Part shown: piece after piece, positions 5,114-59,823 of the stretch
Position numbering within the stretch: the stretch's first letter is position 1
Layout of the letters: every line of letters starts with the position of its first letter
Virus record (IMG/VR): IMGVR_UViG_3300042453_005404
Coordinates: 1 to 64,000 of that record
Length of the DNA stretch: 64,000 bases
Strand: one strand, 5' to 3'
Translations under genes and position numbers: made by a program
The notes under the pieces: model-generated
What the model was told of the DNA's origin: nothing
What the model saw: the letters and a program-made list of their open reading frames with translations, nothing else
Databases searched by the model: none

Positions 5114-5125
5114 AAAGATGAACAC

Positions 5126-5914: not shown

Positions 5915-5918
5915 ACAC

Positions 5919-6746: not shown

Positions 6747-6759
6747 TAACAGAAATAAC

Positions 6760-7515
6760 ATGAAACTTTATCCAATCATATACCTTAACGAAGGTATGCG
6801 TACACCAGAAGAAGCGTTGGAAAAAGGTATTGCTGCGATACAAACACCAACCGGTGTCGCCGGAGGTCAGTTTGTAAATCTTGTTTCAAAAAAACGTATG
6901 CTAAATTTGCTAGAAAAAAACAAAACCTTGTTAAACAATCCAACAGAACGCTTAAAGTTGGTGTTTAAAGCTGCCAACCGTGCTGTTGTTGGTAGCGTTA
7001 GTTTTCGATCTACACACGTTCAAGGTGTAACCAAAATCAACACAAGTGCTGCGGTTAATAAATTTGGACCTCTTGCTTATCAGTTAGCAATGCATTATAT
7101 AAAGCCAAGATGGCTTTGTAGCGATACAAGCCTAACAGCTGAATCAGCAAAAGTGTGGTACGAAATGTACGCACGTCCAGAACTCTATGAAAAAAAATGG
7201 ATGGGTGATCTATCAGGAGATTCTACCAAACTCATTAATGATCGATTGAACGCTGATGAAAACAAAGACTATATCGATTTACCCGACGACATGGTAACCG
7301 ACGAAGCGTATATGACACAAGAACTTGGTGACATGTCCAAATATGGATATCTTTATGTTTATCGTTTAGCTAAACCTATTCCTGCATTGCAGGCTGTTTT
7401 CGATCAAGGGGAAGCGTTTCTTGACGAACTCGTTGACAGAGGATTCGACGCTGCTTTAATCAAACAAATCATTAGTGACAGCGGCGATGCATTTTTTGAA
7501 AGGAGATACGATTGA
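6760..7515 (+). CDS. GNAT-like array paralog 4 (start re-called at 6760)
   Basis: The ATG at 6760 gives MKLYPIIYLNEGMRTPEEAL, matching its paralogs; FGPLAYQLAM is present. Confidence 0.8.
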   Translation: MKLYPIIYLNEGMRTPEEALEKGIAAIQTPTGVAGGQFVNLVSKKRMLNLLEKNKTLLNNPTERLKLVFKAANRAVVGSVSFRSTHVQGVTKINTSAAVNKFGPLAYQLAMHYIKPRWLCSDTSLTAESAKVWYEMYARPELYEKKWMGDLSGDSTKLINDRLNADENKDYIDLPDDMVTDEAYMTQELGDMSKYGYLYVYRLAKPIPALQAVFDQGEAFLDELVDRGFDAALIKQIISDSGDAFFERRYD

Positions 7516-8309
7516 AACTATATCCAATCATATATCTCAACGAAGGTATGCGTACACCAGAAGAAGCGTTGTCGAAAGGTGTGGCTGCAATCAAAAAATC
7601 AGCTGGTAGCGATAAAGTTGCAGCAATCGATTTGCTTTCTATTGAGAGAACTTTAAATATCGCAAAAAAACACAAGCCATGGCAGATCGTTGACGGCGAG
7701 CATTTAGCTAAACGTGCATTTGTTGCTTCGATTGTATATGAGTTTGTTAGTGAAGATATCTACAAAATCATTGGCAGCGCAGGAGTTTCAGACTTTGGTC
7801 CATTAGCTTACCAAATGGTAATGCAAGAAATCATGAAGGATGGTGGATGGCTTGCGTCTGATTCAATGCTTAAACCTGCAAGTCAAAGAGTTTGGCAAAA
7901 GATGTATGAGCTTTCCGAACAAGGTGTATACAAACGTAAGTTTTTGGGAGAGGTAAACAAAAAGCATATCAGTATGCGTCAATTGATTATACCATCTGAA
8001 CTTAAATCCATTGTAGGCATTAAAGACGCTATAAGCGACTATTACAAAACAAGCTACAAAATGACAAATGACGGTTTTATAGCTTATTTGGATGCACTAT
8101 CCCTAAAACCACAAACTTATGGTTGGATGTGGGCATACCAACTTGAATCTCCTAACCCAAACATTGACGAGCTTTATAGAAAAGGTGAAGAGTTAGTTGC
8201 GCAAATAAAAAATATAACGGGATTTGACGATAAAGTTACACATGACATGATCGAGGATGCTGGTGAAAAGTTTTTTGATCGTTTATACGGCAGCAAAGCC
8301 AGCGATTGA
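7512..8309 (+). CDS. GNAT-like array paralog 5 (TTG start overlapping the upstream TGA)
   Basis: TTG-KLYPIIYLNEGMRTPEEAL; SAGVSDFGPLAYQMVM; LASDSMLKPASQRVWQKMY. Confidence 0.8.
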   Translation: MKLYPIIYLNEGMRTPEEALSKGVAAIKKSAGSDKVAAIDLLSIERTLNIAKKHKPWQIVDGEHLAKRAFVASIVYEFVSEDIYKIIGSAGVSDFGPLAYQMVMQEIMKDGGWLASDSMLKPASQRVWQKMYELSEQGVYKRKFLGEVNKKHISMRQLIIPSELKSIVGIKDAISDYYKTSYKMTNDGFIAYLDALSLKPQTYGWMWAYQLESPNPNIDELYRKGEELVAQIKNITGFDDKVTHDMIEDAGEKFFDRLYGSKASD

Positions 8310-8324
8310 CACAAGGAAATCTAA

Positions 8325-9095
8325 ATGAAGCTGTACCCCATTATGTATCTTCATGAAGGTATGCGGACACCAGAAGAAGCGTTGGAAAAAGGTATTGCTG
8401 CTATAGCACACAAGTATGCAACCAGCGTTGGGGGTATAGTGTTGCTTTCTACCAAAAGAACGTTAAAGTACGTACAAAAAAATAAAGCATTAGATGGTTT
8501 AGAACAACGAGCAGTAGTTGCATCGATCAACTATAGGCTGATTCAAGGAGATCTATACAAAATCAATTACAGCGCAGGAGTTTCAGACTTTGGTCCATTG
8601 GCATATCAAATGGTAATGCAAGAAATAATGAAAACTAACAATGGATGGTTGGCTTCTGATGAAAATCTTAAGAAAGCCAGCAAAAGAGTTTGGCAAAAGA
8701 TGTATGAGCTTTCTGAACAAGGTGTATACAAGCGCAAATGGTTAGGTGATTGGGATATCGGCGGGGGAGATCGGACACGGCATCCATTCAGCAGACGAAC
8801 ACATTTAGGTCAAGATTCATCGTTGTATTACGAAGGTATGAAAGATAAGAAGTACGATGGTTCTGAAGCTGATTTTTTAAAATACTTAAGCGAACATAAT
8901 GTAGCACCATATGAGTATGGATGGCTTTGGGCTTACCAACTTCAATCATTTAATCCAAAGTTTGAAGAGCTTTATGAAAAAGGTGAAGAGTTACTTTTGC
9001 AAATCGAACAAATCATCAAAGGTGTAAGAATCAATAACGTTCGTAATGTTTTGCTTTCTGGAGAAAACTTCTTTGGTCGTATGTATCACTCATAA
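8325..9095 (+). CDS. GNAT-like array paralog 6
   Basis: MKLYPIMYLHEGMRTPEEAL; SAGVSDFGPLAYQMVM; YGWLWAYQL. Confidence 0.8.
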   Translation: MKLYPIMYLHEGMRTPEEALEKGIAAIAHKYATSVGGIVLLSTKRTLKYVQKNKALDGLEQRAVVASINYRLIQGDLYKINYSAGVSDFGPLAYQMVMQEIMKTNNGWLASDENLKKASKRVWQKMYELSEQGVYKRKWLGDWDIGGGDRTRHPFSRRTHLGQDSSLYYEGMKDKKYDGSEADFLKYLSEHNVAPYEYGWLWAYQLQSFNPKFEELYEKGEELLLQIEQIIKGVRINNVRNVLLSGENFFGRMYHS

Positions 9096-15610: not shown

Positions 15611-16107
15611 AGTAACTCCAAATGGTTTTCATTAATGTCGGTTGTTGCAAAAGCTATGTAGCCCACTTCACCATCACCACGTAGTATTTTTGTATACACT
15701 ATAATCCATTCTATATTTTGTTGTGGTTGCCCTGTAAACACTCCAAACGTTCCCAAATGAATGCCAATCGGTTCATTATATCTAAACTGAGCCCATCCCA
15801 TGCTACCAAAACTGTCGCCTATACCTTCTTCTAGAACAAAAGCTTCTTCTAGTGAAAACGGCGGAAATGACTTCAAAACTTGAATCGCTTGTAATCCGTT
15901 ATATGGTTCGAACATTGGATTGTTAAACCATGGTGTTCGAACCACGTAATCTTTGTATTCCGATTCGATTAGCTTGTTTAGATCATCACATTTCCATCCT
16001 TGTGAGTTTAACGTTACAGACCTTCCTTCAATTCGTGACATGTTTAAAAACTGAAATCCTTTAATGAACGTTCCCGGTTTTAAGTCAAAAAGTTCTTTGG
16101 CCAACAT
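15607..16107 (-). CDS. Hypothetical protein with a C-terminal KILxxDGxVGY beta-barrel-like motif
   Basis: Start re-called at MLAKELF, just after the dut stop; contains YTKILRGDGEVGYI. Confidence 0.6.
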   Translation of the reverse strand: MLAKELFDLKPGTFIKGFQFLNMSRIEGRSVTLNSQGWKCDDLNKLIESEYKDYVVRTPWFNNPMFEPYNGLQAIQVLKSFPPFSLEEAFVLEEGIGDSFGSMGWAQFRYNEPIGIHLGTFGVFTGQPQQNIEWIIVYTKILRGDGEVGYIAFATTDINENHLELL

Positions 16108-16108
16108 G

Positions 16109-16588
16109 TCATGCCCCTGTTGAACCAAAGCCGCCCGCACCTCTGTCCGTAGAAGTTACAACATCAGTCTCAACAAAATCAACTTTATACGTTGGACTGT
16201 TTGCAAATATTTGTTGAATCACCAACTGAGCAACTCGTTCCCCCTGCTTTACTTGATAAGGTTGTTTTGAAAGATTGGCTAGAACAACATTAATCTCTCC
16301 TCGGTAGTTTACATCTACTGTACCCGTAACTGGAAACACGAGCTTTCTAGAAAGACCCGAACGTGAACGTACATCAAGGTAATACGCATTACCATCTGAA
16401 TCTACCAAAGGACAATCTGCCAACTGCAATCCAGTTTTAACCATGGTTACTTCACCGACAGGCAGCAACGTATCTTCTACAGCTGTAATATCAAATCCAG
16501 CATCGCCAAACTCATGTGCGTGTTTTGGCATCGTGGCATTAGGACTAAGCTTCACAAACTTGATAACTAACTCTTTACGACTTGTCAT
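16109..16588 (-). CDS. dut: Trimeric dUTPase
   Basis: AGFDI, RSRSGL, GTVDVNYRGEI, ERVAQLV and RGAGGFGSTG. Confidence 0.96.
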   Translation of the reverse strand: MTSRKELVIKFVKLSPNATMPKHAHEFGDAGFDITAVEDTLLPVGEVTMVKTGLQLADCPLVDSDGNAYYLDVRSRSGLSRKLVFPVTGTVDVNYRGEINVVLANLSKQPYQVKQGERVAQLVIQQIFANSPTYKVDFVETDVVTSTDRGAGGFGSTGA

Positions 16589-16649
16589 GTATCATTACCT
16601 CGTTGATCAACCATAACAAGTGCAAAAGCCAGATATCAAACAAAAACAA

Positions 16650-16679
16650 AAAGGCCGGTTACTTTCGTAACCGGCCTTT
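16650..16679 (-). terminator. Intrinsic terminator after the AAA+ ATPase gene
   Basis: Perfect 13-bp stem aaaggccggttac/gtaaccggccttt. On the minus strand it has a GAAA loop followed by a U-rich tract. Confidence 0.88.
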
Positions 16680-16712
16680 CTGATTGTCTAGGCTGGTCTA
16701 GCCAGCGGGCTC

Positions 16713-18005
16713 TCAACGCTTGCGAGTACGAGCCTTAACAGGGGTTGCAGGAGCAGCGGGAGCCGCAGGAGCAGGTGCCGCAGCCTTGGGAGCAGGAGTG
16801 TTACCAGCAAGCACCCGAACCAGAAGCTCCTCGATATGACCATGCACCTTGAAGGCATTAGCACGGTTAGCATTGAGAGACTTCCAAGAAGCCATGAGAA
16901 CCTCGGCAGGAGCATCCTTCATGTAAGCGCCGAACTGCGCAGCCTCGGAATCAGTCAGAGCATGAGTCTTAAGCTTGTGGTCAAGCTTGCCCATGATATC
17001 GATGAACTTGGCATGACGCTTGGCATCATCCTTGGGAAGACGAGCCTTGGTGCCCTTCCAATCCTTGAGAACATCCTCCGCAGAGATATCGAGGCCACGC
17101 TCCTTGACGAACTTCCAGAAAGCGTTGGCAGCCTCGAAACCAACCATGCTAGCAGCCATGTGGCAGAACACAACATCCTCCGGGGCATCGTAAAGACCCG
17201 ACTGAGTGAGCTCTGCATCAAGGTTACCCCAAGCACGACGGTCAGGGTACTTCTTGTTAGGCTCGCAAGTATCCTTGTACTCAAGGTACTTCTCATTGCT
17301 ACGGATGAACTCCACAAGAGCCTGATTGCAGTGCTCATTAGCCCAATCGAGCCAATCCTGCGTAGTGGGATCGAGATCGACAACAGCGTAACGAGACAGA
17401 GCAGCAGGGTCCATCGGAGTAACGTCATACTGGTCACCGACGTTTACCGCAACCATGATGCGAGTACCATCATGCAGAAGGTTACCATCGAAAGCCTTGC
17501 TATCCGCAAGCTGGAAGGTAGCCTGTTCAACACCCTTGATCGCACGGTTAAGCTCATCGAGGAAGAGCACGCACGGGAACTCGCAAGTAGCCAGAAGCCA
17601 CTCGCAAGCACGGAACACCGTGCCACCACGGTTACCCTCGAAGGGAATACCCGTGATATCACCCTCGGTCATCTGCGACAGACGACGCTCCACAACCGGG
17701 ATACCCATATCGTAATGCCACACGTTGCGAGGCATATCCGCATAAGCAGGATTGCTACCGTTACGCTTCCAGAACGAAGCGATTGCCTTGGCAAAGCCAG
17801 AATCCTTGCCAAGAGCAGCGGTCACCCGCTCGCAGTTACCACGATCCATGTAGAAATCGTGACGAAGTTCACTAGCGATCTGATAGACCACCTGTGACTT
17901 GCCGATACCGTGACGACCACGAAGCATGGTCGCACGATTCGCAGAGAATCGCTTGAAGAGGTTCTTGGTGGACTTGATATCGAGAGTGAGAGCGGAGAGA
18001 GCCAT
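16713..18005 (-). CDS. MoxR-like AAA+ ATPase
   Basis: Walker A GRHGIGKS, Walker B LFLDELNR, MDPAALSRY and YPDRRAW. Confidence 0.85.
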   Translation of the reverse strand: MALSALTLDIKSTKNLFKRFSANRATMLRGRHGIGKSQVVYQIASELRHDFYMDRGNCERVTAALGKDSGFAKAIASFWKRNGSNPAYADMPRNVWHYDMGIPVVERRLSQMTEGDITGIPFEGNRGGTVFRACEWLLATCEFPCVLFLDELNRAIKGVEQATFQLADSKAFDGNLLHDGTRIMVAVNVGDQYDVTPMDPAALSRYAVVDLDPTTQDWLDWANEHCNQALVEFIRSNEKYLEYKDTCEPNKKYPDRRAWGNLDAELTQSGLYDAPEDVVFCHMAASMVGFEAANAFWKFVKERGLDISAEDVLKDWKGTKARLPKDDAKRHAKFIDIMGKLDHKLKTHALTDSEAAQFGAYMKDAPAEVLMASWKSLNANRANAFKVHGHIEELLVRVLAGNTPAPKAAAPAPAAPAAPATPVKARTRKR

Positions 18006-18035
18006 TTGCTTGTTTCCTTTAGCCTTTCTAGAACC

Positions 18036-18064
18036 AGTATATCAGTCAGTTGCGATTTTCTAAA
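18036..18064 (-). promoter_or_regulatory. Early sigma70-type promoter TTTAGA-N17-TATACT
   Basis: Read directly on the minus strand, with an extended -10 TG; lies 30 nt upstream of the AAA+ gene. Confidence 0.75.
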
Positions 18065-18107
18065 ACTTATTTATTTTTTTTTGTTTTTGGCTGAAATACA
18101 GGGGTTT

Positions 18108-18320
18108 TCAGCTGTTTTGAAGTTCAAGCCATTCCCAACCGTTGACCAAATCCTCTTCTGCAAGATTTGTGGCAAATCGAACGGCGTCGTTACGAGCAAG
18201 GGGATCGCAGTTTGTACACACAGAGAACAAAGGCTCCTCGCTGACATAGAAGGTCGATCCTTCGCCAGCTTCTTGACATTTCTCGCAAGTTACTTCTTCC
18301 GGCCAAAAATACTGGAACAC
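18108..18320 (-). CDS. Small putative Zn-finger protein (CEKC...CTNC)
   Basis: GTG start at 18320 with an AGGAG SD 7 nt upstream; two CxxC motifs. Confidence 0.55.
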   Translation of the reverse strand: MFQYFWPEEVTCEKCQEAGEGSTFYVSEEPLFSVCTNCDPLARNDAVRFATNLAEEDLVNGWEWLELQNS

Positions 18321-18333
18321 AGCAATACTCCTT

Positions 18334-19659
18334 TCACGCACGCCTAACAGCCTTGTCTTCCTTGCCCATCTTAACAATCAAGTCACCGGGACGGGCCGCA
18401 GAGATATCACCAGTTTCGGTAATAACCCACATAACCTTGGTACCAACCACGGCACCCATCTTGGGAGCATATCCGTCAGTCATGATGATACATGCACTGT
18501 ACTTACCCTTGCGCTTGCTGTCGTTGAGGTAACGCTGCACGGCATCGAAGTCTGTACCACCGCAGCGGGTACGAGCCCACTTAAAGCTCTGGCCGTTGTT
18601 GACCGACTGCAAAGACTTTTCATCCATCTCGGTATCAAAGTTAATGATATCGATCTTGCCTTCCTTGCTGGCAGCAAAAGTCTCTGCAAGAAACCGACGA
18701 ACATCATCGTCACTAACCGACCCAGATTGATCGATAGCACAGAGAATGTTGGCAATGGTGCTACGCTTGGCTCCCGGCATCATGTACGGAAGACGCTTGT
18801 TGATACGCTTCATGGTGCTGTTACGCTCCATGCTACGAGTGCGACCGATAAACATACGCAGAATGGCCTTCCAATCAAGCTCATTCTTCAGAAGCTTCTC
18901 GATCTGAGAGACAACCTCGGAAGGGATAGAGCCCCACGAAGCACGCTGCTGCGCAGCCTTGGCACCCTTCTCGATCAACTCACGAACCTGCTCACGCATG
19001 ATATCACGAAGCTCGTCGGGCACATCACCCCAACCACCGTGACCGTCGAGAGATTCACCATCCTCGTTGCCAACCTCAAGGGTATACTCACCCTCGTCAT
19101 TGGTCTTGCCGTTTTGCTCGGCATATTCTTCCAAACGAGCCATGTACCAATCGGCACTCTCATGCTTGGGAAAGCTCTTGATAAGAGCCGCAAGCTTGGG
19201 ATCATCCGACTTGGGAGCACGACCGGGCATAAGACAGAAATCGGGAAGCTTGTCGCCGCCGATAATCGAGTTGATGGCAAGATCGGTAGCAACGTTCCAC
19301 AGACGAGAACGCTTGCGATCCGCAACGCTGCGCTCTGCAATATGCATGAACGCAACGTGAAACATCTCATGCATAAGCACACCAATCCGCTGCTTGGTAG
19401 GAAGGGAACGCATGAAATCAGGGTTATATCCCATCTTGATATTACCCTGCTTGTCTGCACAAACGTAGGCAGTATCTACCTTCCAATCCGCAACCTTGGG
19501 AATATGCATAGACATACCTCCAAGAAACGGCTCCTCTTGCATGAGTTGAATGAACTCACGATCAAAACGATATTCCTCGGAGGGAACGTTGGGATCGGGC
19601 TCATGCCGCACGTTGAGAGAAGTGACCTTGTTGCTGGTGTTGTCGTTCTTGGTTTCCAT
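18334..19659 (-). CDS. DUF2201-type metallopeptidase-like plus VWA domain protein (MoxR partner)
   Basis: HEMFH (HExxH), WNVATDLAIN, MIDAS AIDQSGS, GGTDF and IIMTDG. Confidence 0.88.
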   Translation of the reverse strand: METKNDNTSNKVTSLNVRHEPDPNVPSEEYRFDREFIQLMQEEPFLGGMSMHIPKVADWKVDTAYVCADKQGNIKMGYNPDFMRSLPTKQRIGVLMHEMFHVAFMHIAERSVADRKRSRLWNVATDLAINSIIGGDKLPDFCLMPGRAPKSDDPKLAALIKSFPKHESADWYMARLEEYAEQNGKTNDEGEYTLEVGNEDGESLDGHGGWGDVPDELRDIMREQVRELIEKGAKAAQQRASWGSIPSEVVSQIEKLLKNELDWKAILRMFIGRTRSMERNSTMKRINKRLPYMMPGAKRSTIANILCAIDQSGSVSDDDVRRFLAETFAASKEGKIDIINFDTEMDEKSLQSVNNGQSFKWARTRCGGTDFDAVQRYLNDSKRKGKYSACIIMTDGYAPKMGAVVGTKVMWVITETGDISAARPGDLIVKMGKEDKAVRRA

Positions 19660-19665
19660 ACTATT

Positions 19666-19694
19666 ATAATATCATGTATAACTAGGAATCTAAA
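19666..19694 (-). promoter_or_regulatory. Early promoter TTTAGA-N17-TATTAT, predicted leaderless
   Basis: The -10 ends 6 nt before ATG 19659. Confidence 0.75.
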
Positions 19695-19703
19695 ACAAAT
19701 AAA

Positions 19704-19742
19704 AACCCCGGCAAAACAAGGGTTTCCTGTTAAGCCGGGGTT
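19704..19742 (-). terminator. Probable terminator after hsp20
   Basis: Stem aaccccggc/gccggggtt, followed by a T-rich tract on the minus strand. Confidence 0.65.
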
Positions 19743-19765
19743 GTTTAAGGTGTTAAAGATTGATA

Positions 19766-20113
19766 TCAGTCTACTGGAATGTTACGAGGTTGTTCTGATG
19801 CTTTGATTGGACAAAGCACAGTAAGAATTCCATCTTTGCATGAAGCGGAAATGGCGGATATATCTACTTTGCTTCCAAGCCGATATGTAAGTGTTTTCTT
19901 GTTTTTTTCTGGGCGTTGTAGGGTAATCACAAGTTGTGATCCTTTTGTTGCCAAGGATACATTTTCTCGACTATAACCGGGAACTTCTATGGTTAGTTTG
20001 CATGATCCATCTGCTTCATGAGTTACTTCATCTTGCAAGTTGTACAAGTGAGATTCCCATGACGAGTTACGAGGAAAATTAAAGATATCGAAATATGGTG
20101 CTAGTGTTGACAT
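19766..20113 (-). CDS. Small heat-shock protein (Hsp20 / alpha-crystallin domain)
   Basis: IEVPGYSRENV and ISASCKDGILTV. Start re-called at MSTLAPYF with an AGGAG SD. Confidence 0.85.
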   Translation of the reverse strand: MSTLAPYFDIFNFPRNSSWESHLYNLQDEVTHEADGSCKLTIEVPGYSRENVSLATKGSQLVITLQRPEKNKKTLTYRLGSKVDISAISASCKDGILTVLCPIKASEQPRNIPVD

Positions 20114-42078: not shown

Positions 42079-42107
42079 TTGACTTTTGATTGCTGCTATG
42101 TTATGTT
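42079..42107 (+). promoter_or_regulatory. Sigma70-like promoter TTGACT-N17-TATGTT upstream of recA
   Basis: Spacing read directly; an AAGGAG SD precedes ATG 42133. Confidence 0.5.
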
Positions 42108-42132
42108 GTTTGAAGAAGGAGAGCAAAACTAT

Positions 42133-43902
42133 ATGGCAATCAAATCAAACAAAAAGCCTCTATTAGACGAACCAGCAGCAAACGAGGACACAGACTTTTC
42201 TGCTGAACTAATCAAGCAAATCAACAAAGAAGCTGGTAACAAAATCGCTTTCAACCTTGGTACCGACGAAGCTCCAACAACAGTTAAACGTTGGATTTCT
42301 ACAGGTTCCAAACAACTTGACTACATTATCTCTAACCGTCGCAACGGTGGTGTAGCAGAAGGGCGTATTGTAGAAATCCAAGGCCCACCGAGCTCTGGTA
42401 AATCTCACATCGCTTATGAGATTGCTAAAAGCACACAACGTATGAATGGTATCGTTGTGTATATTGATACAGAGAATGCTACATCAGTAGAAAACCTTGA
42501 AGGTCTTGGTATCGATATTCGCAAGCGTTTCGTGTTTATTCAAGAAACCTGTATTGAAGATATCTTCAAGGTTATTGAATCAACTATTGAAAAGGCTCGC
42601 AATCTCAAGGCTGATGTACCGGTAACGGTTATTTGGGACTCTGTTGCTGCCAGTGCTCCCAAGGCAGAGATTGAAGGTGATTATGACCAGAACACGATTG
42701 GTTTGGCGGCTCGTGTATTGTCCAAAGGTTTCCGTAAGGTTACTGATGTGATTGGGGACAAGAATGTTTGTCTTGTGCTGCTAAATCAGCAGAGAACTAA
42801 GATTGGATGTGTCAGCCCAGAAACAATGATCTCTTATCGTCCGGTTGGTACAAACCAAGAACGTGTTGGCACCATGCGTTCATTTTTTAAAGAAACAGGA
42901 ATCTATTTTAACAGTATGATCATTGGAAACCCGGTTGATATATCTGGTTGGGAGGTGAAGACACTAATAGCTGATCATAATAATTTTTCCGAAGTTGTTT
43001 GGAAACCGGTCTTGCGGGTTGTAAGAAAGCCAAGTGCTCCCAGAATAAACATCACCACAGCTTCTGGTTTCTCACTTGATTGCTCACCAGACCATAAAGT
43101 TTTTGTTCGAAGTGTTAATTTTCCATGTCCAAGCGAGTGGTATGCAGAAGCCAAAGATATTTATAAAACAGTCAAGAATTATCCTCTTCAAATAAAAACT
43201 ATCGGAGGCTGGGAGCCATTTCAAATTAAAAGCTCTTTGGAGGATATTGAGATTGCCGATATTGAAGTAGAGGGAGAACATTCTTATCTAAGTAATGGAA
43301 TTTTGTCACACAATACAATGTATGGCGACCCGACAACTACTCCCGGTGGAATGGCAATTCCATATCATGCATCTACTCGTATCAAGCTTACAGGTGGTCA
43401 ACAAATCAAACAAAGCATCAACGGCAAGGAGGCTGTTATTGGTATCAACGTTACCTGCAAGACCATTAAGAACAAGGTTGCAAGACCTTGGAGAGAAGTA
43501 TCATTTGAGATTCACTTTGGTAAGGGAGTGAGAGAGGACGAAAACGTTTTCGATGAACTTCGTGAGTTTTGTGAGAAATGCAAAGATCCTGTTATCTTTG
43601 AAGGTAAGAAAATCAAGCTAGAGGGAACGTCACAATGGAAATATTTCCAAGTAAACGATGTTAAAACTGGGGAGATTGTTGTGGATGAAAAGTTCTACAA
43701 GAGCGAGTTTGGAAGCCGTATTCTAAACAATCCAGAGTATGCTGATTACGTCACTGCTCTAATGGATGCAACGTTCATTATGAAGAATGGTGATGACAAC
43801 CACAAAACGGTTGCTAGCATTGATCTTGGTAGTGCTACCGAGGTTGAAGCTGCAAAAGTTGAAAAACTTGGCCGTGCTGGCAAAAACTTGCTAGCAGACT
43901 GA
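42133..43902 (+). CDS. recA: RecA/UvsX recombinase, intein-containing
   Basis: WISTGS, GRIVEIQGPPSSGKS, IWDSVAA, AIPYHASTRI and KNKVARPWRE. Confidence 0.92.
   Translation: MAIKSNKKPLLDEPAANEDTDFSAELIKQINKEAGNKIAFNLGTDEAPTTVKRWISTGSKQLDYIISNRRNGGVAEGRIVEIQGPPSSGKSHIAYEIAKSTQRMNGIVVYIDTENATSVENLEGLGIDIRKRFVFIQETCIEDIFKVIESTIEKARNLKADVPVTVIWDSVAASAPKAEIEGDYDQNTIGLAARVLSKGFRKVTDVIGDKNVCLVLLNQQRTKIGCVSPETMISYRPVGTNQERVGTMRSFFKETGIYFNSMIIGNPVDISGWEVKTLIADHNNFSEVVWKPVLRVVRKPSAPRINITTASGFSLDCSPDHKVFVRSVNFPCPSEWYAEAKDIYKTVKNYPLQIKTIGGWEPFQIKSSLEDIEIADIEVEGEHSYLSNGILSHNTMYGDPTTTPGGMAIPYHASTRIKLTGGQQIKQSINGKEAVIGINVTCKTIKNKVARPWREVSFEIHFGKGVREDENVFDELREFCEKCKDPVIFEGKKIKLEGTSQWKYFQVNDVKTGEIVVDEKFYKSEFGSRILNNPEYADYVTALMDATFIMKNGDDNHKTVASIDLGSATEVEAAKVEKLGRAGKNLLAD
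42808..43314 (+). mobile_element. 169-aa mini-intein in the RecA L2 loop
   Basis: Starts CVSPET; block B CSPDH; ends ADIEVEGEHSYLSNGILSHN with Thr at +1. Removing it restores QQRTKIG-TMYGDPTTTPGG. No LAGLIDADG or HNH motif seen. Confidence 0.92.
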
Positions 43903-46675: not shown

Positions 46676-47080
46676 ATGTCAATGAGAAAAAACATTCTTG
46701 CTCTTTCGTTGTTTGAAGCAGCAAAGACTCTAAAAGAGCAAGCAGAAACTGTTTCAAACGAAGGTGTTCCGGTTGATGACGAAACTGGAGAAGCCATTAC
46801 CTTGGATCATATTCTTGAACGTTTAAACACCATTCGCTCTGGTAAAAGTTTTCAAGATCCAGAAGTTTATGGAAAGCTAACAACTCTATTCAAATCAATG
46901 TCAAGCGATGACAAACTTAAACTAAATCAACAACTTCGCAACATTGGAGCCGTAGTTCAAAATCAAATTCCTGTTGAAATGGCTCCCGAAACATCAACAC
47001 CCGCTCCATCACCCGCACCCCCATCAACACCCGCTCCATCCCCCGCACCCCCTCCACCGCCCTCAGCCCCCGCCGCTTGA
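46676..47080 (+). CDS. Hypothetical protein (LSLFEAA leader) with a Pro-rich tail
   Basis: RLNTIRSGKSF; the tail is encoded by a 30-nt tandem repeat. Confidence 0.7.
   Translation: MSMRKNILALSLFEAAKTLKEQAETVSNEGVPVDDETGEAITLDHILERLNTIRSGKSFQDPEVYGKLTTLFKSMSSDDKLKLNQQLRNIGAVVQNQIPVEMAPETSTPAPSPAPPSTPAPSPAPPPPPSAPAA
46992..47051 (+). repeat. 30-nt tandem repeat x2 (29/30 identical)
   Basis: catcaacacccgctccatc(a/c)cccgcacccc, encoding STPAPSPAPP twice. Confidence 0.9.
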
Positions 47081-48524: not shown

Positions 48525-49559
48525 ATGGCAAAGATTCTCGTTGGGCTTTCTGGTGGTGTAGATTCTGCCGTTGTTGCTGCTTTGTTGAAGCGACAAGGGC
48601 ATGAAGTCTATGGTTATACCCTTAAGCTTCTAGAAACACTTGACAGTGATGAAGGTGAGGGTTGCTGCACCTTCAAGGATATTCGTGATGCTCGTATGAT
48701 TTGTGATCAGATGGGTATTGAATACCTTGTCACAAACTGGAAGCAACAGTTCAAGGAAAAGGTTATTGATCGTTACCTTGATGGAGCCAAACAAGGTATT
48801 GCTTACAATCCGTGTGTAACGTGTAATAGCACCATCAAACTTCCAGTGCTTGCTGCGGTTGCCAATCATTTTGGCTGCGAGTATATTGCTACTGGACACT
48901 ATGCAAGAGTAAACAATGGACGAATCAGCAGGGCAAAAAATCTCAAAAAAGATCAAAGCTATTTTCTCTGGGAAACTCCATCAGATGTTGTTTCTCGACT
49001 TATCTTTCCCCTTGGAGATTTTGATAGCAAGGAAGATACTAGAGCTCTTGCCCGTGAGTTTGGTCTTCACGTCGCTGACAAGAAGGATTCAACCGACTTG
49101 TGCTTTCTTGCTGGAGGTACCAAGGAAGAGTTTTTGGAGCGAAACAACGTTGTTTCCTTTGGTGGTAACTTTGTTGATGTTGATGGAAAGGTAGTAGGAA
49201 AGCATGAAGGATACACAAAATACGTCGCAGGACAGCGTGCCAACATTGCTGGCAGTAATAATGCTCGTTACGTTCTCAATGTTGTACGTTCTACTGGGAA
49301 CGTCGTGGTTGGTTCAAGGGAGCAGGCCAGTTCTCGATCTTTCTTTCTCACCAACGCTAGGATCGATTTTAAGGTAGGTGTAGATACGGTTACAGCAGTT
49401 ACCCGCTATCATTCATCTCCTGTCGCTGTAGAGGCTATTACGAGCTCTGACAGTGGTGTAAATGTTTCTTTGCGGGAATCTGTGTTTGGTGTTGCAAAGG
49501 GACAGAGCTGTGTGTTTTATTGCGGTGATGAAGTTGTTGGTGGAGGGGTGATTTCATGA
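48525..49559 (+). CDS. mnmA: tRNA U34 2-thiouridylase
   Basis: PP-loop LSGGVDS, GCC, NPCVTCN, IATGHYARV, KDQSYFL, KKDSTDLCF and GQSCVFY. Confidence 0.92.
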   Translation: MAKILVGLSGGVDSAVVAALLKRQGHEVYGYTLKLLETLDSDEGEGCCTFKDIRDARMICDQMGIEYLVTNWKQQFKEKVIDRYLDGAKQGIAYNPCVTCNSTIKLPVLAAVANHFGCEYIATGHYARVNNGRISRAKNLKKDQSYFLWETPSDVVSRLIFPLGDFDSKEDTRALAREFGLHVADKKDSTDLCFLAGGTKEEFLERNNVVSFGGNFVDVDGKVVGKHEGYTKYVAGQRANIAGSNNARYVLNVVRSTGNVVVGSREQASSRSFFLTNARIDFKVGVDTVTAVTRYHSSPVAVEAITSSDSGVNVSLRESVFGVAKGQSCVFYCGDEVVGGGVIS

Positions 49560-49849
49560 TTATCGGTGAGTTGTACTTTGTGAAAGAGCTTTTCTGGCTT
49601 CTCTTTCCAACGAAAGAACTGGCGTCGAAGCGATGGTGCTTTGCGGCGACCGGCGGTCGAGCGAAGCAGGTGAAGGGGGCAGTTTCTTTTGTTGAACCAA
49701 AGACTTATGTTGTTTTTCTTGAAGAAGATGAAAATGTAAATGAATGTTGCTATAAACTGCTTGATTCAAATGGTAACATTGGTTGGATTGGTTGGAATAG
49801 CTGTTCTGATTTCTCTAGCTATTTCGAGCTTGTAAAGGCAAATCAATGA
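49556..49849 (+). CDS. Hypervariable-cassette paralog 1 (small beta-barrel-like)
   Basis: IGELYFVK...LFPTKE-[GC-rich 49619-49681]-VEPKTYVV...KLLDSNGNIGW. Confidence 0.8.
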   Translation: MIIGELYFVKELFWLLFPTKELASKRWCFAATGGRAKQVKGAVSFVEPKTYVVFLEEDENVNECCYKLLDSNGNIGWIGWNSCSDFSSYFELVKANQ

Positions 49850-50148
49850 GTGATATTCAAATCGGTGAGCTTTATTTGGTTAAAGGTTTCTGTCTTCTCA
49901 TTCCAACAAAAGAACGGGCGTCGAGGCGGTTGTCGGGGGGGTGCGGGCGACCGGCGGCGTATCGACATGCAAAAGAGTTAAGCCAAATTTTTAAATGCAA
50001 CGTTTCTGTTGTTGAACCAAACACTTACGTTGTTTTGCTTGAAATGGATGAAGTATATTTCAAGGTTCTTGACTCAAACGGTAACATTGGTTGGATTTAT
50101 TGCTCTGATTTCTCTGGTTATTTCAAGCTTGTAAAGGCAAATCAATGA
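49846..50148 (+). CDS. Hypervariable-cassette paralog 2
   Basis: Same scaffold; GC-rich cassette at 49915-49965. Confidence 0.8.
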   Translation: MSDIQIGELYLVKGFCLLIPTKERASRRLSGGCGRPAAYRHAKELSQIFKCNVSVVEPNTYVVLLEMDEVYFKVLDSNGNIGWIYCSDFSGYFKLVKANQ

Positions 50149-50459
50149 GTGATTTCATGATTATCGGTGAGTTGTATTTGGTTAAAAGTTACCACTGGTT
50201 TCTCTTTCCAGCAAAAGAGCAGGCGACGGGGGTCGATGCGGCGAGGGTGGCGGTGAGGGTGTCGCAGAGTTATGCAAAATGGTTCAGCCAAGAATTTAAA
50301 TGCAAAGTTTTTGTTGTTGAACCAAACACTTATGTTGTTTTGCTTGAAGTAAATGAAAATGAATGTTGCTATAAACTGCTTGATTGTAATGGAAACGTTG
50401 GTTGGATTTATTGTTCTGATTTTTCCGACTATTTCGAGCTTGTAAAGGCAAATCAATGA
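50145..50459 (+). CDS. Hypervariable-cassette paralog 3
   Basis: Same scaffold; GC-rich cassette at 50220-50267. Confidence 0.8.
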   Translation: MSDFMIIGELYLVKSYHWFLFPAKEQATGVDAARVAVRVSQSYAKWFSQEFKCKVFVVEPNTYVVLLEVNENECCYKLLDCNGNVGWIYCSDFSDYFELVKANQ

Positions 50460-50770
50460 GTGATATTCAAATCGGTGAGTTGTATTTGGTAAAAGAGTTT
50501 TTCTGGTTTCTCTTTCCAACAAAAGAACTGGCGAGGCGGGTGCAGACCGCCGTGGTGGCGGCGGCGAGGTACAGGGCGAAGGCGGCGTGGCGTAATGCAA
50601 AAATGTTAAGCAAAGATTATAACTGCAACGTTTTTGTTGTTGAACCAAACACTTGCTTTGTTTTGCTTGAAGAAGATGAAAATTTTTTCAAGGTTCTTGA
50701 CTCAAACGGTACCGTTGGTTGGATTCGTTGTAGGGATTTTTCCGACTTTTTCGAACTTGTAAAGGAATAA
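50456..50770 (+). CDS. Hypervariable-cassette paralog 4
   Basis: Same scaffold; GC-rich cassette at 50528-50593. Confidence 0.8.
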   Translation: MSDIQIGELYLVKEFFWFLFPTKELARRVQTAVVAAARYRAKAAWRNAKMLSKDYNCNVFVVEPNTCFVLLEEDENFFKVLDSNGTVGWIRCRDFSDFFELVKE

Positions 50771-50774
50771 AGCA

Positions 50775-50990
50775 ATGCTTCAATTTGGAAAGCTTTATCG
50801 GTTCAATAGCGCACACGAAGACTTTATGGTAAGCACAAGGCGTGGTTGGAAGTTTGTCGGTAAAAACACTATGTTTGTTTTGCTTAAAGAAGAAGACGAG
50901 CATTATGTTGTTTTGCTATCTGATGGTGTGATTGGCAACGTTTACACAAATGAAGGTTCGCTAGACTTGGTAACAAAGGATAACATATGA
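50775..50990 (+). CDS. Small beta-barrel-like protein, distant relative of the array, no GC cassette
   Basis: FGKLYRF...NTMFVLLKE...VLLSDGVIG. Confidence 0.65.
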   Translation: MLQFGKLYRFNSAHEDFMVSTRRGWKFVGKNTMFVLLKEEDEHYVVLLSDGVIGNVYTNEGSLDLVTKDNI

Positions 50991-51241
50991 ATGACTTTAA
51001 TGTAAAGATTGGCAAGATATACGAGATAGAGTCTTTGGAAGGCAAACAAAAAATAGGTGGTGGTACCACTTTCATGGTTAGAGTTGAATCTAATCGTTGG
51101 ATTAACTATCCGTGCAAAGGTACAACAGCTTTGGTCTTGGATCTTCCTTCGCTCTCGGGTTTTTATAAAGCGTTGTTCAACGATGGCACTATTGGTGAGT
51201 TTTATGTTGCGGGCGATAGGTTTCGTGAGGTATTGAAATGA
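50987..51241 (+). CDS. Small beta-barrel-like protein, distant relative of the array
   Basis: KIGKIYEI...ALVLDL...YKALFNDGTIGEF. Confidence 0.6.
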   Translation: MNDFNVKIGKIYEIESLEGKQKIGGGTTFMVRVESNRWINYPCKGTTALVLDLPSLSGFYKALFNDGTIGEFYVAGDRFREVLK

Positions 51242-52724: not shown

Positions 52725-52910
52725 ATGGCAAATCACAACAAGAACAAGCGTTATGGTGGCAGCGAGCGGGTTGAGCGGGTGCGCAAGGCTCGCCCGAGGG
52801 GGCAGGAAGCTCTTGAGAGGCAGCGGCAACGCAAGCTTGAAAGGGGTTCAGTTCGTCCACTACCAGAAACCGATTACGATCTTCTTATCGATTACACTAA
52901 CCTTGACTGA
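52725..52910 (+). CDS. Small basic hypothetical protein
   Basis: 61-aa Arg-rich ORF. Confidence 0.5.
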   Translation: MANHNKNKRYGGSERVERVRKARPRGQEALERQRQRKLERGSVRPLPETDYDLLIDYTNLD

Positions 52911-52919
52911 GGTTTAGTC

Positions 52920-53336
52920 GTGAATCGACTCATCGATGCTGCTCTGAGTTTTGCTCGTGAGCATAAGCATGACAGCGATATGCCTGCATGGGTAACTGCC
53001 ATGATTGTGTCCGGTGGACGAGTTTTGTCCGTTGGTTACAATAATCGTGCAAACAGTGGCTTGCAAGAGCGTTATAAGCAAAACCCTCATTGCAACTCTA
53101 TCCATGCAGAGGTTGACGCTATTCTCAACGTTCGACGCAAGATTGATCTGACGGGCAGCAAGATTGTTGTTGTTCGTAGGTTGCGTTTCGATTCCGAGCG
53201 CAATCCTGCTCTTGGTATGGCAAAGCCTTGCGTTACCATGTGTCAGGCTATCTTGTATGCTTATGGCATCAAGAAGGCAATCTATACCATTAACACCAAT
53301 GAATATGGGGTTATGAGGATTGTTGATCCTCGCTAA
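52920..53336 (+). CDS. Zn-dependent cytidine/dCMP-deaminase-like protein
   Basis: VLSVGYN, SIHAEVDAI and AKPCVTMC (an atypical PCxxxC). Confidence 0.8.
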   Translation: MNRLIDAALSFAREHKHDSDMPAWVTAMIVSGGRVLSVGYNNRANSGLQERYKQNPHCNSIHAEVDAILNVRRKIDLTGSKIVVVRRLRFDSERNPALGMAKPCVTMCQAILYAYGIKKAIYTINTNEYGVMRIVDPR

Positions 53337-53346
53337 AAGGAACAAA

Positions 53347-53655
53347 ATGCAAAAACCTCCTCGTTGGTTTATTGCTGGTAAAATGTATACGTGGGCACCG
53401 TGTCCCATGGGCGTGGGGCGTGGGGCAGATAGCAAGTATTACGTACAAACAGCTTCTCCAAAAACTGCTTCATTTCGAGAAAGACAACAAGCTGAAGAGA
53501 TTAGCATCAGCACAAACGAATGTGTTGTAATGCTTGAAGTTGAATGGTATAAAGAAGATCTTCTGGCTAAAATACTCACAGAGAACGGTAGAATCGGATG
53601 GGTCAGAATCTCTCCGTTTTATGTTCATGAATGGAAACAAGTAACAGGTTCCTAA
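53347..53655 (+). CDS. Small beta-barrel-like protein related to the array, with a short GC-rich patch
   Basis: AGKMYTW-[GC patch]...VVMLEVE...KILTENGRIGWV; AAGGA SD before ATG 53347. Confidence 0.7.
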   Translation: MQKPPRWFIAGKMYTWAPCPMGVGRGADSKYYVQTASPKTASFRERQQAEEISISTNECVVMLEVEWYKEDLLAKILTENGRIGWVRISPFYVHEWKQVTGS

Positions 53656-58884: not shown

Positions 58885-59823
58885 ATGAGTAAAGAACAGC
58901 CAAACATAACAAAAAAACATCTAAAAATCCTTGAGAATGCCAAAAAGGATGTGATATACTCTAATAGTATAGACAACCTATTAGATGGTAAAATGACAAT
59001 CACAACTGATATCGATCTTTCTGTTCCCACCAATGCACAATACATTCAGCTGCGTAAGCATGTCAGTTATTCTGAGATTGCTACTTGGATGGATTGCGCA
59101 TACAAGCACAAGCTCAAATACCTCGACGAAGTAAAGACCGATAATGACGGTCCTTCCGAGCACACTGAGTTTGGTCAAGTTATTCACGATGCGCTGGAGC
59201 AATACCTTACTACAAAGGTTATGCCTCCAATCGAGCAAGTAAGAACTCAACTCACTGAGTATTTTTCAAAGCTACCAAATGCTAGCGAGCTAAAAGAATC
59301 GGAATGGCATGATACCATTGAGCCTATTCTTTCTGAAGTGCCAGCTTTTATGGAAGAAACTTTTGGAGATTGGAAGTTTGTTGCTGCTGAACTTCCATTG
59401 ATGGAAACTCTAGACAAACACAATCATATGTTCAAGGGATTTGTTGATGGTGTTATTGAAGGAGTTAACAAAAAGGGCGAGCGTGTTGTTTGGATTATTG
59501 ACTGGAAGACATGCAGTTTCTTTTGGCCATTGGCCAAGCGCATTGACCCTAAGAAAACAATGCAGCTTGCTTTTTACAAATACTTTTATGCTCGCAAGCA
59601 CAACCTGACACTTAAAGATGTTAAGTGTGGTTTTATTCTGCTTCGACGTAGCAAAAAGAAAGGAAACTGTGAGCTTGTTACTGTCAGTGTTGGTGACAAG
59701 GCAGTAGAAAAAGCAATGGGAACGATTGATACAATGCTTGGATATATTCAAAAGCGTATGTTTCCAAAGAATCGTGAAAGTTGCAAGTTTTGCCCATATG
59801 CAGGAACGGAGCACTGCCCATGA
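58885..59823 (+). CDS. PD-(D/E)xK nuclease (RecB/Cas4-like)
   Basis: VSYSEI...CAYKH, FKGFVDGV, IIDWKT, QLAFY and CKFCPY...HCP. Confidence 0.85.
   Translation: MSKEQPNITKKHLKILENAKKDVIYSNSIDNLLDGKMTITTDIDLSVPTNAQYIQLRKHVSYSEIATWMDCAYKHKLKYLDEVKTDNDGPSEHTEFGQVIHDALEQYLTTKVMPPIEQVRTQLTEYFSKLPNASELKESEWHDTIEPILSEVPAFMEETFGDWKFVAAELPLMETLDKHNHMFKGFVDGVIEGVNKKGERVVWIIDWKTCSFFWPLAKRIDPKKTMQLAFYKYFYARKHNLTLKDVKCGFILLRRSKKKGNCELVTVSVGDKAVEKAMGTIDTMLGYIQKRMFPKNRESCKFCPYAGTEHCP

What the first reader, a model, noticed from the sequence alone, without database searches (positions are those of the whole stretch)
49556..50770. Tandem array of four near-identical small genes, each with a different GC-rich, NNG-periodic hypervariable cassette at the same site
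Seen in sequence: four translationally coupled paralogs share AT-rich scaffolds. The 27-mer gcttgtaaaggcaaatcaatgagtgat recurs at all three junctions. After the conserved (L)FP(T/A)KE, each gene has an unrelated in-frame segment: 49619-49681 (21 codons), 49915-49965 (17), 50220-50267 (16), 50528-50593 (22). By hand count these are about 68-78% GC, and 58 of 76 codons end in G, whereas the flanks favour A/T-ending codons. None has a stop or frameshift, so selection appears to keep them in frame. Inference: a constant scaffold with one hypervariable loop suggests targeted diversification of a binding surface, as in antibody CDRs or DGR targets. Length variation and the G bias do not fit a classical fixed-length A-to-N DGR. 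Alternatives are (GCG)n microsatellite slippage plus mutation, untemplated GC-biased addition during repair, or a DGR-like process from an (AAG)n or antisense (CAA)n template elsewhere in the genome. No reverse transcriptase or template repeat is visible in this window. This is the best candidate here for an undescribed system.
Basis: partly seen in the sequence, partly recalled or inferred. Interest (0 to 1): 0.88.

Follow-up and report, generated by a model that had tools for sequence, protein, structure and literature searches.

The report
Repeat-derived hypervariable hairpin in phage paralogs
Four tandem copies of a small, uncharacterised jumbo-phage gene each carry a GC-rich hypervariable insert that looks like a decayed alanine-codon repeat changing by small insertions, deletions and frame slips, not like the product of a dedicated mutator.

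Summary
Four translationally coupled paralogs (49556-50770) have AT-rich scaffolds (33-34% GC) and an in-frame 48-66 nt segment at the same site with 68-78% GC. There, 58 of 76 codons end in G, against 48 of 333 in the flanks.

The targeted-diversification reading is not supported.
- The window is the first 64 kb of a 260-kb freshwater jumbo-phage contig with at least 18 such paralogs in five arrays.
- The wider family has 261 clusters at 50% identity and no Pfam or PHROG model.
- Across 54 distinct genes the cassettes average 70% GC against 35% in the flanks.
- Ala is 66% GCG in cassettes against 8% genome-wide, so the bias sits at nucleotide level.
- Another array of the same genome uses GCC/NNC cassettes, which rules out genome-wide codon or mutation bias.
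- Between close relatives a cassette is either identical or changed in one jump: 21-nt indels, 6-24 nt tandem duplications, or compensated ±1 frameshifts. Flanks can be 0% diverged. The point-substitution rate is not raised.
- Alleles are stable across independent assemblies.
- I found no reverse transcriptase, no template copy and no adenine-specific pattern.

AlphaFold places the cassette at the tip of a helical hairpin inserted in an SH3-like barrel.

Best reading: a degenerate (GCG)n/(GCC)n low-complexity tract turning over by slippage and recombination. The protein's function is unknown.

The parts
49556..49849 (+). Paralog g1 (97 aa). It has the shortest cassette and lacks the conserved AK.LS..YKCN stretch that follows it in the other copies.
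49846..50148 (+). Paralog g2 (100 aa)
50145..50459 (+). Paralog g3 (104 aa)
50456..50770 (+). Paralog g4 (104 aa). Close orthologues in related phages carry different cassette alleles.
49619..49681 (+). Cassette 1: 68% GC, 13/21 codons end in G
49915..49965 (+). Cassette 2: 78% GC, 13/17 codons end in G
49935..49941 (+). G7 homopolymer inside cassette 2, a possible slippage-prone tract. It is identical in the other assemblies.
50220..50267 (+). Cassette 3: 75% GC, 14/16 codons end in G
50238..50261 (+). 12-nt tandem duplication GCGGCGAGGGTG x2 inside cassette 3 (reads AARV/AVRV)
50528..50593 (+). Cassette 4: 77% GC, 18/22 codons end in G. It forms the end of helix 1, the low-confidence loop and the start of helix 2 in the model.
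49828..49854 (+). Junction 27-mer with the ATGA stop/start overlap (g1/g2). Identical copies lie at 50127-50153 and 50438-50464.
49778..49796 (+). 9-nt tandem duplication ATTGGTTGG (IGWIGW) in the g1 scaffold, another slippage footprint
50775..50990 (+). 71-aa cassette-less distant relative. It shares the C-terminal SH3-like half.
   Evidence: hhalign probability 92.7%
50987..51241 (+). 84-aa possible further distant relative (22% identity in the alignment only)
53317..53655 (+). Distant family relative (HMM E = 2.4e-6) with a small GC-rich island directly after its GKMY hairpin

Best explanation
The four genes belong to a large, uncharacterised family of about 100-aa phage proteins. Each has an SH3-like beta-barrel with a helix-loop-helix hairpin inserted between the N-terminal beta-hairpin and the rest of the barrel. 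The tip of that hairpin is encoded by a cryptically simple, GC-rich tract. I read the tract as a decayed alanine-codon repeat: GCG-type in this array and GCC-type in another array of the same genome. The tract turns over by slipped-strand events: in-frame indels, 6-24 nt tandem duplications, and ±1 slips that are later compensated. It is also shuffled by recombination among paralogs. Selection keeps every copy open. New copies of the founder codon keep entering by duplication, so the GC content and the third-base bias persist even though the cassettes of different paralogs can no longer be aligned. Shown here: the composition, the synonymous-codon bias, the two codon flavours in one genome, the indel and frameshift events, the allele stability, and the absence of a reverse transcriptase or template in the regions searched. 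Inferred: that slippage alone maintains the GC richness; that the hairpin tip is a binding surface under diversifying selection in a phage-host conflict; and that no helper enzyme is involved.
For: 1. The GC island is a family-wide feature. In 54 distinct genes the cassettes average 70% GC (range 58-79%) against 35% in the flanks, and G3 is 0.64 against 0.18.
2. The bias is at nucleotide level. G-ending synonymous codons in cassettes against the genome: Ala 66 vs 8%, Arg 75 vs 10%, Gly 60 vs 6%, Val 80 vs 16%, Lys 100 vs 42%. The most frequent base at each codon position spells GCG, and G:C is 2:1.
3. In the same genome, the four genes at L047 2995-4218 have NNC cassettes (C3 68-80%, G3 0-8%). 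In the pooled NNC cassettes, 32% of codons are exactly GCC and 34% are one step away, with runs of up to five GCC. The amino acids are the one-step neighbours of GCC: A, S, T, P, V, G, D. A genome-wide codon, tRNA or mutation bias cannot give both flavours.
4. Internal short repeats exceed codon-shuffled controls: 0/500 shuffles reach the observed count for k = 5 and 6, and 6/500 for k = 7. TRF finds the 12-nt duplication in cassette 3. There is a 24-nt duplication in L047_3605 and a 6-nt AATGCA duplication in L022_57.
5. Change is saltatory. Pairs with 0-5% flank divergence have cassettes that are either 0-5% diverged or 25-48% diverged with 11-24 gapped positions. The events are a 21-nt deletion next to a 12-nt imperfect direct repeat, and compensated frameshifts. 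In L013 the string GGTGGCGACGGCG reads VATA; in L010 and L011 it reads WRRR. In L031_160 against L008_11335, a -1 shift is followed by a +1 shift 17 nt later.
6. Point substitutions are not elevated: 10 per 202 cassette codons against 60 per 839 flank codons.
7. Alleles are stable. The window version is identical in 5 other assemblies. The g4 orthologue has about 5 discrete alleles, several of them seen in more than one independent sample. The first-copy cassette is invariant in all 2-copy arrays.
8. Every family copy that is not cut by a contig end is intact across the whole HMM, or is a clean cassette-less form. None is frameshifted.
9. In the model the cassette spans helix 23-31, a loop of pLDDT about 55 (residues 32-40) and the start of helix 41-54.
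10. Cassette-less family members exist (L053, L058).
Against: Slippage alone may not explain why all cassettes stay at about 70% GC in a 40% GC genome. In indel-free close pairs only 1 of 10 cassette substitutions is at a third position, against 27 of 60 in the flanks (p = 0.04, small sample). This hints at selection on the third base or on GC content itself. The G-type cassettes are only 14% exact GCG and are equally close to GGG, so the 'decayed GCG repeat' picture is looser than for the GCC type. The perfect repeats are short (2-5 units), so slippage rates may be modest. Only about 94 kb of the 260 kb were examined for helper enzymes. No read-level data were available, so within-population variation is untested. 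Function and selection on the hairpin tip are inferred only; nonsynonymous:synonymous is 9:1 against 36:14, which is not significant.
Confidence: 0.6

Rival explanations
1. The GC richness is itself selected. Each cassette would be a DNA- or RNA-level element whatever its exact sequence: for example a high-melting barrier that limits gene conversion between tandem paralogs, a polymerase or ribosome pause site, or a recombination hotspot. Hypervariability would then follow from weak constraint on the actual letters.
For: The GC island is kept in nearly all lineages in both G3 and C3 flavours. Third positions change less than the first two in close pairs (1/10 against 27/60). Scaffolds recombine around intact cassettes: L020_4295 and L030_389 have identical cassettes with flanks 4.5% apart, and L008_5646 and L030_52 share a cassette behind different N-termini.
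Against: No stable hairpin is detectable: mean z = -0.05 over 44 cassettes against codon shuffles. Canonical G4 motifs occur in only 4 of 44, and C-type cassettes put the G-rich strand on the other side. No strong shared motif was found. Some relatives have AT-rich cassettes or none (L046, L053, L058).
Confidence: 0.15
2. A dedicated, undescribed diversification process acts on the cassettes. Examples are programmed breakage with G/C-biased untemplated fill-in, or induced slippage by a phage enzyme.
For: Changes are sharply confined to the cassette while flanks are identical (L013 vs L010, L025 vs L024). The composition is unlike the rest of the genome. About 170 kb of the genome was not examined.
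Against: Alleles are stable across independent samples and projects. One cassette (MVTMVPMLVGALRAEGQIC) is invariant while its neighbour varies. Codon-phase periodicity and subfamily-specific third bases are not what untemplated addition predicts. No candidate enzyme was found next to the three arrays whose neighbouring large ORFs were scanned against Pfam (the window array, L008, L009). The nearby family A DNA polymerase fragment is replicative in type.
Confidence: 0.08
3. A DGR or DGR-like retroelement copies an A-rich template, such as (AAG)n or (AAC)n, into the cassettes with adenine mutagenesis. This would give NNG or NNC codons.
For: The fixed third base with variable first two bases superficially resembles the AAC-to-NNC design of DGR variable regions (DGR properties from PMC3240598 and PMC5758913).
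Against: Cassette lengths vary from 11 to 30 codons, and changes are indels and frameshifts. Positions 1-2 are not random: G 48% at position 1 and C+G 68% at position 2, with Ala dominating. No RVT-type hit appeared among about 50 ORFs scanned. No template-like copy was found in 88 kb. The fold is not C-type lectin or Ig, and the site is mid-protein. At least 18 targets with different lengths would need many templates.
Confidence: 0.03
4. An ancestral insertion of a mobile GC-rich mini-element has since drifted. Comparable elements are Rickettsia palindromic elements, or mitochondrial GC clusters and translational-bypass elements.
For: It is a GC-rich in-frame insert in an AT-rich gene, and cassette-less relatives exist.
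Against: There is no palindromic structure. No copies exist outside the family. The inserts are always in frame and open in every family copy not cut by a contig end, so they are translated, not bypassed. Drift in a 40% GC genome would erase the GC and third-base bias, which instead persists after the cassettes have become unalignable.
Confidence: 0.04

Closest known systems
Low-complexity ('cryptically simple') coding regions that evolve by replication slippage, including alanine-tract (GCN)n expansion and contraction
   Same: The composition is dominated by one codon and its one-step neighbours. Short internal tandem repeats exceed chance. Divergence between close relatives is dominated by indels. 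The frame is preserved. (My own knowledge of the class; features tested.)
   Different: Here the tract sits at one fixed site in at least 18 paralogs of an AT-rich phage genome. It comes in two codon flavours in one genome, shows compensated frameshifts, and has perfect runs of only 2-5 units.
Diversity-generating retroelements (PMC3240598, PMC5758913, PMC8144416)
   Same: A constant scaffold carries one hypervariable segment. The third codon base is fixed while the first two vary. The carrier is a phage.
   Different: There is no reverse transcriptase, template repeat or adenine-specific pattern. The length varies. The fold and the position in the protein differ. Alleles are stable rather than individual-specific.
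Simple-sequence contingency loci of bacteria (homopolymer or short-repeat phase and length variation)
   Same: The change is slippage-type. There are G runs of up to 7. The compensated ±1 frameshifts look like off-then-on footprints.
   Different: There are no long perfect tracts. No frameshifted (off) copies were seen in any assembly. The variation is in a coding hairpin of many expressed paralogs, not a switch of one gene.
Cassette-type antigenic variation (Borrelia vls, Neisseria pilE/pilS, Anaplasma msp2)
   Same: A central variable segment lies between conserved arms in a multicopy family. There is some mosaic sharing: 29 nt are shared between two paralogs of L022. The scaffolds recombine.
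   Different: All copies are full-length, translationally coupled ORFs. There are no silent donors and no single expression site.
SH3 and bacterial SH3b domains
   Same: The predicted five-strand barrel has SH3 domains as its best structural matches. There are sub-threshold SH3_3 and SH3_4 Pfam hits.
   Different: Foldseek E-values are all above 1e-3 and Pfam scores are below the cut-off. A 30-residue helical hairpin is inserted after the first beta-hairpin.

Membership tests
Diversity-generating retroelement target | Reverse transcriptase (with accessory gene) encoded nearby | tested here: inconclusive
   No RVT-type Pfam or PHROG hit among about 50 ORFs of the window and of the flanks of two more arrays. 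About 170 kb of the contig was not examined.
Diversity-generating retroelement target | Template repeat about 90% identical to the variable region, with mismatches only at template adenines | tested here: not met
   Short-word blastn of the four cassettes against 88 kb of the genome gives only chance matches of 13 nt or less outside the family. Paralog and allele differences involve all bases and gaps.
Diversity-generating retroelement target | Variation without length change | tested here: not met
   Cassettes are 11-30 codons long. Alleles differ by 1-, 6- and 21-nt indels.
Diversity-generating retroelement target | Variable region at the C-terminus of a C-type lectin or Ig-like fold | tested here: not met
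   The cassette spans residues 25-47 of 104 in an SH3-like model.
Slippage-driven low-complexity coding tract | Composition dominated by one repeat unit and its one-step derivatives | tested here: met
   NNC (GCC-type) cassettes: 32% exact GCC plus 34% one step away. NNG (GCG-type) cassettes: 14% exact GCG plus 32% one step. Genome ORFs: 1% plus 13%.
Slippage-driven low-complexity coding tract | Internal short tandem or dispersed repeats beyond composition | tested here: met
   k-mer repeat excess against codon and position shuffles. TRF 12-nt x2 repeat. 24-nt and 6-nt duplications.
Slippage-driven low-complexity coding tract | Close relatives differ mainly by indels, with no raised substitution rate | tested here: met
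Slippage-driven low-complexity coding tract | Length polymorphism within populations | not testable with these tools
   No reads were available. The consensus assemblies of one strain are identical.
Phase-variable contingency locus | Long perfect simple repeat with on/off frameshift variants in a population | tested here: inconclusive
   There is a G7 at 49935-49941 and G5-G6 runs elsewhere. No frameshifted copy was seen in any assembly. Compensated frameshifts exist between strains.
Silent-cassette gene-conversion system | Promoterless partial donor cassettes plus one expression locus | tested here: not met
   All copies not cut by a contig end are complete ORFs with start codons in coupled arrays.
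SH3-like fold | Five-strand barrel recognised by structure or profile comparison at accepted thresholds | tested here: inconclusive
   The top PDB and BFVD matches are SH3 domains with probability 0.9-1.0, but E is at least 4e-3 and TM is 0.4-0.6. Pfam SH3_3 scores 15.8 bits against a cut-off of 27.
Translational-bypass or palindromic GC mini-elements | Inserts that break the frame or fold as palindromes, and occur in unrelated genes | tested here: not met
   Always in frame. Folding z is about 0. No copies outside the family.

The most novel reading that the evidence does not exclude
The GC-rich tracts are kept because they make the hairpin tip evolvable. On this reading the family carries a built-in, enzyme-assisted or structure-assisted mutable site: a phage counterpart of contingency loci, or a new targeted diversifier distinct from DGRs. 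It would let a jumbo phage retune a panel of at least 18 small binding proteins against host factors.
Probability: 0.1. Interest if true: 0.8.

Novelty: new variant of a known kind. Interest (0 to 1): 0.42.

Why it matters
The finding defines an uncharacterised and highly expanded family: 261 clusters at 50% identity, and at least 18 copies in one genome. These are small SH3-like phage proteins with a modular hypervariable helical hairpin, typical of genes caught up in phage-host conflict. It also gives a clean natural example of how a repeat-derived tract can keep a foreign base composition and codon phase. Two codon flavours sit side by side in one genome, and the same nucleotides are read in different frames in sister strains. 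Finally, it removes a false lead: an NNG or NNC codon pattern on a constant scaffold is not enough to call a DGR-like system.

Tried and rejected
- blastn of 4 kb around the array against INPHARED phages: no match.
- Pfam, PHROGs, NCBIfam and PADLOC on the paralogs: nothing above threshold.
- Profile search against PDB sequences: 0 hits.
- tRNA scan of the window: none.
- RNA/DNA hairpin hypothesis: mean z = -0.05 against codon shuffles.
- G-quadruplex hypothesis: 4/44 canonical motifs, and C-type cassettes contradict a sense-strand G requirement.
- Shared recognition motif: only weak enrichments, such as CGAGGG and GGCGTGGC.
- Donor or template search within 88 kb: none.
- Simple AT-to-GC transition bias from scaffold-like codons: rejected, because scaffold third positions are T-rich and would give C3, not G3.
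- Genome-wide codon or tRNA explanation: rejected by the coexistence of G3 and C3 arrays in one genome.
- Locus search with the broad alignment A5 failed because it was too diverse, so a sub-alignment was used.
- Four literature searches found no description of this family or pattern.
Full report
**1. Observation**

The region holds four ORFs: 49556-49849, 49846-50148, 50145-50459 and 50456-50770. Each overlaps the next by ATGA. TRF sees a 305-bp array of 3.2 copies.

The four segments at the stated coordinates are in frame.
- GC is 68-78% against 33-34% for the rest of each gene.
- 58 of 76 codons end in G, against 48 of 333 in the flanks (Fisher p = 2e-25).

The only correction concerns the word 'unrelated'. 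Cassettes 1 and 2 share two strings, cassettes 3 and 4 share another, and pairwise identity is 28-57% against 72-83% in the flanks.

The sequence is real. Five contigs assembled from other samples are 100% identical over 1.3-2.4 kb, cassettes included.

**2. Context**

The window is positions 1-64000 of a 260,466-bp contig (IMG/VR UViG_3300042453_005404). It is a jumbo phage. Its genes include ribonucleotide reductase, a DnaB-like helicase, a UvsX-like recombinase, gp32, thymidylate synthase, thymidine kinase, dUTPase, a family A polymerase fragment, a T4-type baseplate protein and an MnmA-like tRNA thiouridylase directly upstream of the array. No phage in INPHARED resembles it at the DNA level.

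The same genome holds more arrays of the family:
- seven genes in L008 (contig 105-117 kb);
- three in L009 (about 130 kb);
- four in L047 (about 121 kb).

That makes at least 18 cassette-bearing paralogs. Related phages have two copies where the window has four.

The family has no Pfam, PHROG, NCBIfam or PADLOC model. It has 52 close homologues in the 5.8-billion-protein set, all of them unnamed or 'hypothetical protein'. It has 261 representative clusters at E <= 1e-3 in the 1.84-billion set.

**3. Structure**

AlphaFold2 with a 26-sequence alignment gives pLDDT 84.5 and pTM 0.76. The model reads as follows: a beta-hairpin (residues 9-20), helix 23-31, a low-confidence loop 32-40, helix 41-54, then four strands, a short helix and a last strand.

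Foldseek's best matches in the PDB and in BFVD are SH3 domains and phage SH3-like proteins. All have E >= 4e-3. The cassette (residues 25-47 of g4) is therefore the distal part of a helical hairpin inserted in an SH3-like barrel.

The hairpin is dispensable in relatives. The 71-aa gene just downstream shares only the C-terminal half (hhalign 92.7%). Members in L053 and L058 go straight from the N-terminal hairpin to the barrel.

**4. The composition is a nucleotide-level, family-wide property**

In 54 distinct genes taken from the window and 30-odd loci, the figures are as follows.

| Measure | Cassettes | Flanks |
|---|---|---|
| Mean GC | 70% (range 58-79%) | 35% |
| G at third position | 0.64 | 0.18 |
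| Length | 11-30 codons | - |

Within amino-acid classes, G-ending codons are used far more in cassettes than in the genome.

| Amino acid | Cassettes | Genome |
|---|---|---|
| Ala | 66% | 8% |
| Arg | 75% | 10% |
| Gly | 60% | 6% |
| Val | 80% | 16% |
| Glu | 79% | 24% |
| Lys | 100% | 42% |

The most frequent base at each codon position spells GCG, G:C is 2:1, and the commonest residues are Ala, Arg and Gly.

**5. Two flavours in one genome**

The L047 array of the same phage, and distant relatives in other phages (L044, L045, L049, L050, L056), also have GC-rich cassettes (65-85% GC) in AT-rich scaffolds. There the codons end in C (C3 56-89%, G3 0-16%). In the pooled C-type cassettes, 32% of codons are exactly GCC and 34% are one step from it. 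Runs reach five GCC. The residues are A, S, T, P, V, G and D, which are the one-step neighbours of GCC.

A few relatives have AT-rich cassettes (L046). Both flavours coexist in one genome, so the third-base bias cannot come from genome-wide codon preference, tRNA supply or a general mutation bias. It tracks the subfamily, as a founder repeat unit would.

**6. How the cassettes change**

Among pairs with flank divergence below 6%, the cassette is either as similar as the flanks (0-5%) or very different (25-48%) with 11-24 gapped positions. The events can be read directly:
- a 21-nt deletion next to a 12-nt imperfect direct repeat (L025 against L024, flanks 0/261);
- a 6-nt AATGCA duplication (L022_57);
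- 12-nt and 24-nt tandem duplications (cassette 3; L047_3605);
- compensated frameshifts.

Two frameshift cases stand out. In L013 against L010 and L011 (flanks 0/252), the shared string GGTGGCGACGGCG is read VATA in one and WRRR in the other. In L031_160 against L008_11335, a -1 shift is followed by a +1 shift 17 nt downstream.

Internal k-mer repeats exceed codon-shuffled and position-shuffled controls.

In ten indel-free close pairs, cassettes have 10 substitutions in 202 codons and flanks have 60 in 839. The point-mutation rate is therefore not raised. Only 1 of the 10 is at a third position, against 27 of 60 in the flanks (p = 0.04).

Scaffolds recombine around cassettes. Two paralogs of L022 share 29 nt inside otherwise different cassettes.

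**7. Time scale**

The window's version recurs unchanged in five other assemblies. Contigs chosen through the neighbouring 71-aa gene give a sample that is not selected on the cassette. In that sample the g4 orthologue falls into about five discrete alleles. Several of them occur in more than one sample and project. The first-copy cassette is invariant.

None of the family copies that are not cut by a contig end is frameshifted. This is variation between strains under purifying selection for an open frame. It is not per-generation scrambling.

**8. Tests of other ideas**

- DGR: there is no reverse-transcriptase hit among about 50 ORFs, and no template-like copy in 88 kb. Length changes, non-random first and second positions, a different fold and a different location all count against it.
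- Hairpin or G-quadruplex element: folding z is about 0 and there are few G4 motifs.
- Shared motif: only weak enrichments.
- Mobile mini-element or bypass element: the inserts are always in frame, and no copies lie elsewhere.
- Artefact: excluded.

**9. Verdict**

Its favoured inference, a new targeted diversification system, is not supported.

The best reading is a degenerate alanine-codon-repeat tract at the tip of an inserted helical hairpin. It turns over by slippage-type indels, small duplications, compensated frameshifts and paralog recombination, in a large uncharacterised phage gene family (confidence about 0.6).

Two things remain unexplained. The first is why GC richness is kept so uniformly, with a hint of third-position constraint. 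The second is what the proteins bind.

A built-in mutable site, or a helper enzyme encoded in the unexamined 170 kb, is not excluded (about 0.1).

Noticed in passing
window 4325-9095: Six tandem paralogous ORFs of 256-279 aa, 30-51% identical to each other, with no Pfam hit. This is a second expanded family in the window.
   Followed up: partly
window 46992-47070 (in ORF 46682-47080): C-rich 30-nt x2 tandem repeat encoding a Pro/Ala/Ser tail. The tail differs in sequence among the L013 and L016 orthologues. It is another GC-rich low-complexity tract in this AT-rich genome.
   Followed up: partly
L047 2995-4218 (same contig, about 121 kb): Four more tandem paralogs whose cassettes are GCC/NNC type (C3 68-80%). 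The arrays in the window, L008 and L009 are almost all GCG/NNG type.
   Followed up: yes
L053 112-382 and 2967-3258; L058 2985-3255: Family members in another phage that lack the hairpin cassette altogether.
   Followed up: partly
window 52725-52910: 61-aa Arg-rich ORF whose central part also uses unusually many G-ending codons (CGG, AGG, GAG, CAG).
   Followed up: no
window 53317-53655: Distant SH3-like relative with a short GC-rich island right after its GKMY hairpin. The called start (53407) may be too far downstream.
   Followed up: partly
window 42079-43902; L016 640-3299; window 58885-59823 vs L010 8299-10224: The UvsX/RecA-like gene is 607 aa with two RecA_N hits, and its L016 orthologue carries an intein-like hit. 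The PDDEXK nuclease gene is 312 aa here but 641 aa with a LAGLIDADG hit in L010. These look like strain-variable intein or homing-endonuclease insertions.
   Followed up: no
window 48525-49559: Phage-encoded MnmA-like tRNA 2-thiouridylase (Pfam tRNA_Me_trans, E = 5e-63) directly upstream of the array and overlapping its first start codon.
   Followed up: no
window 16000-20000: Local GC of 0.48-0.50 against about 0.40 elsewhere. The stretch spans an ATPase gene and a 440-aa ORF that matches an HNH-endonuclease PHROG family.
   Followed up: no
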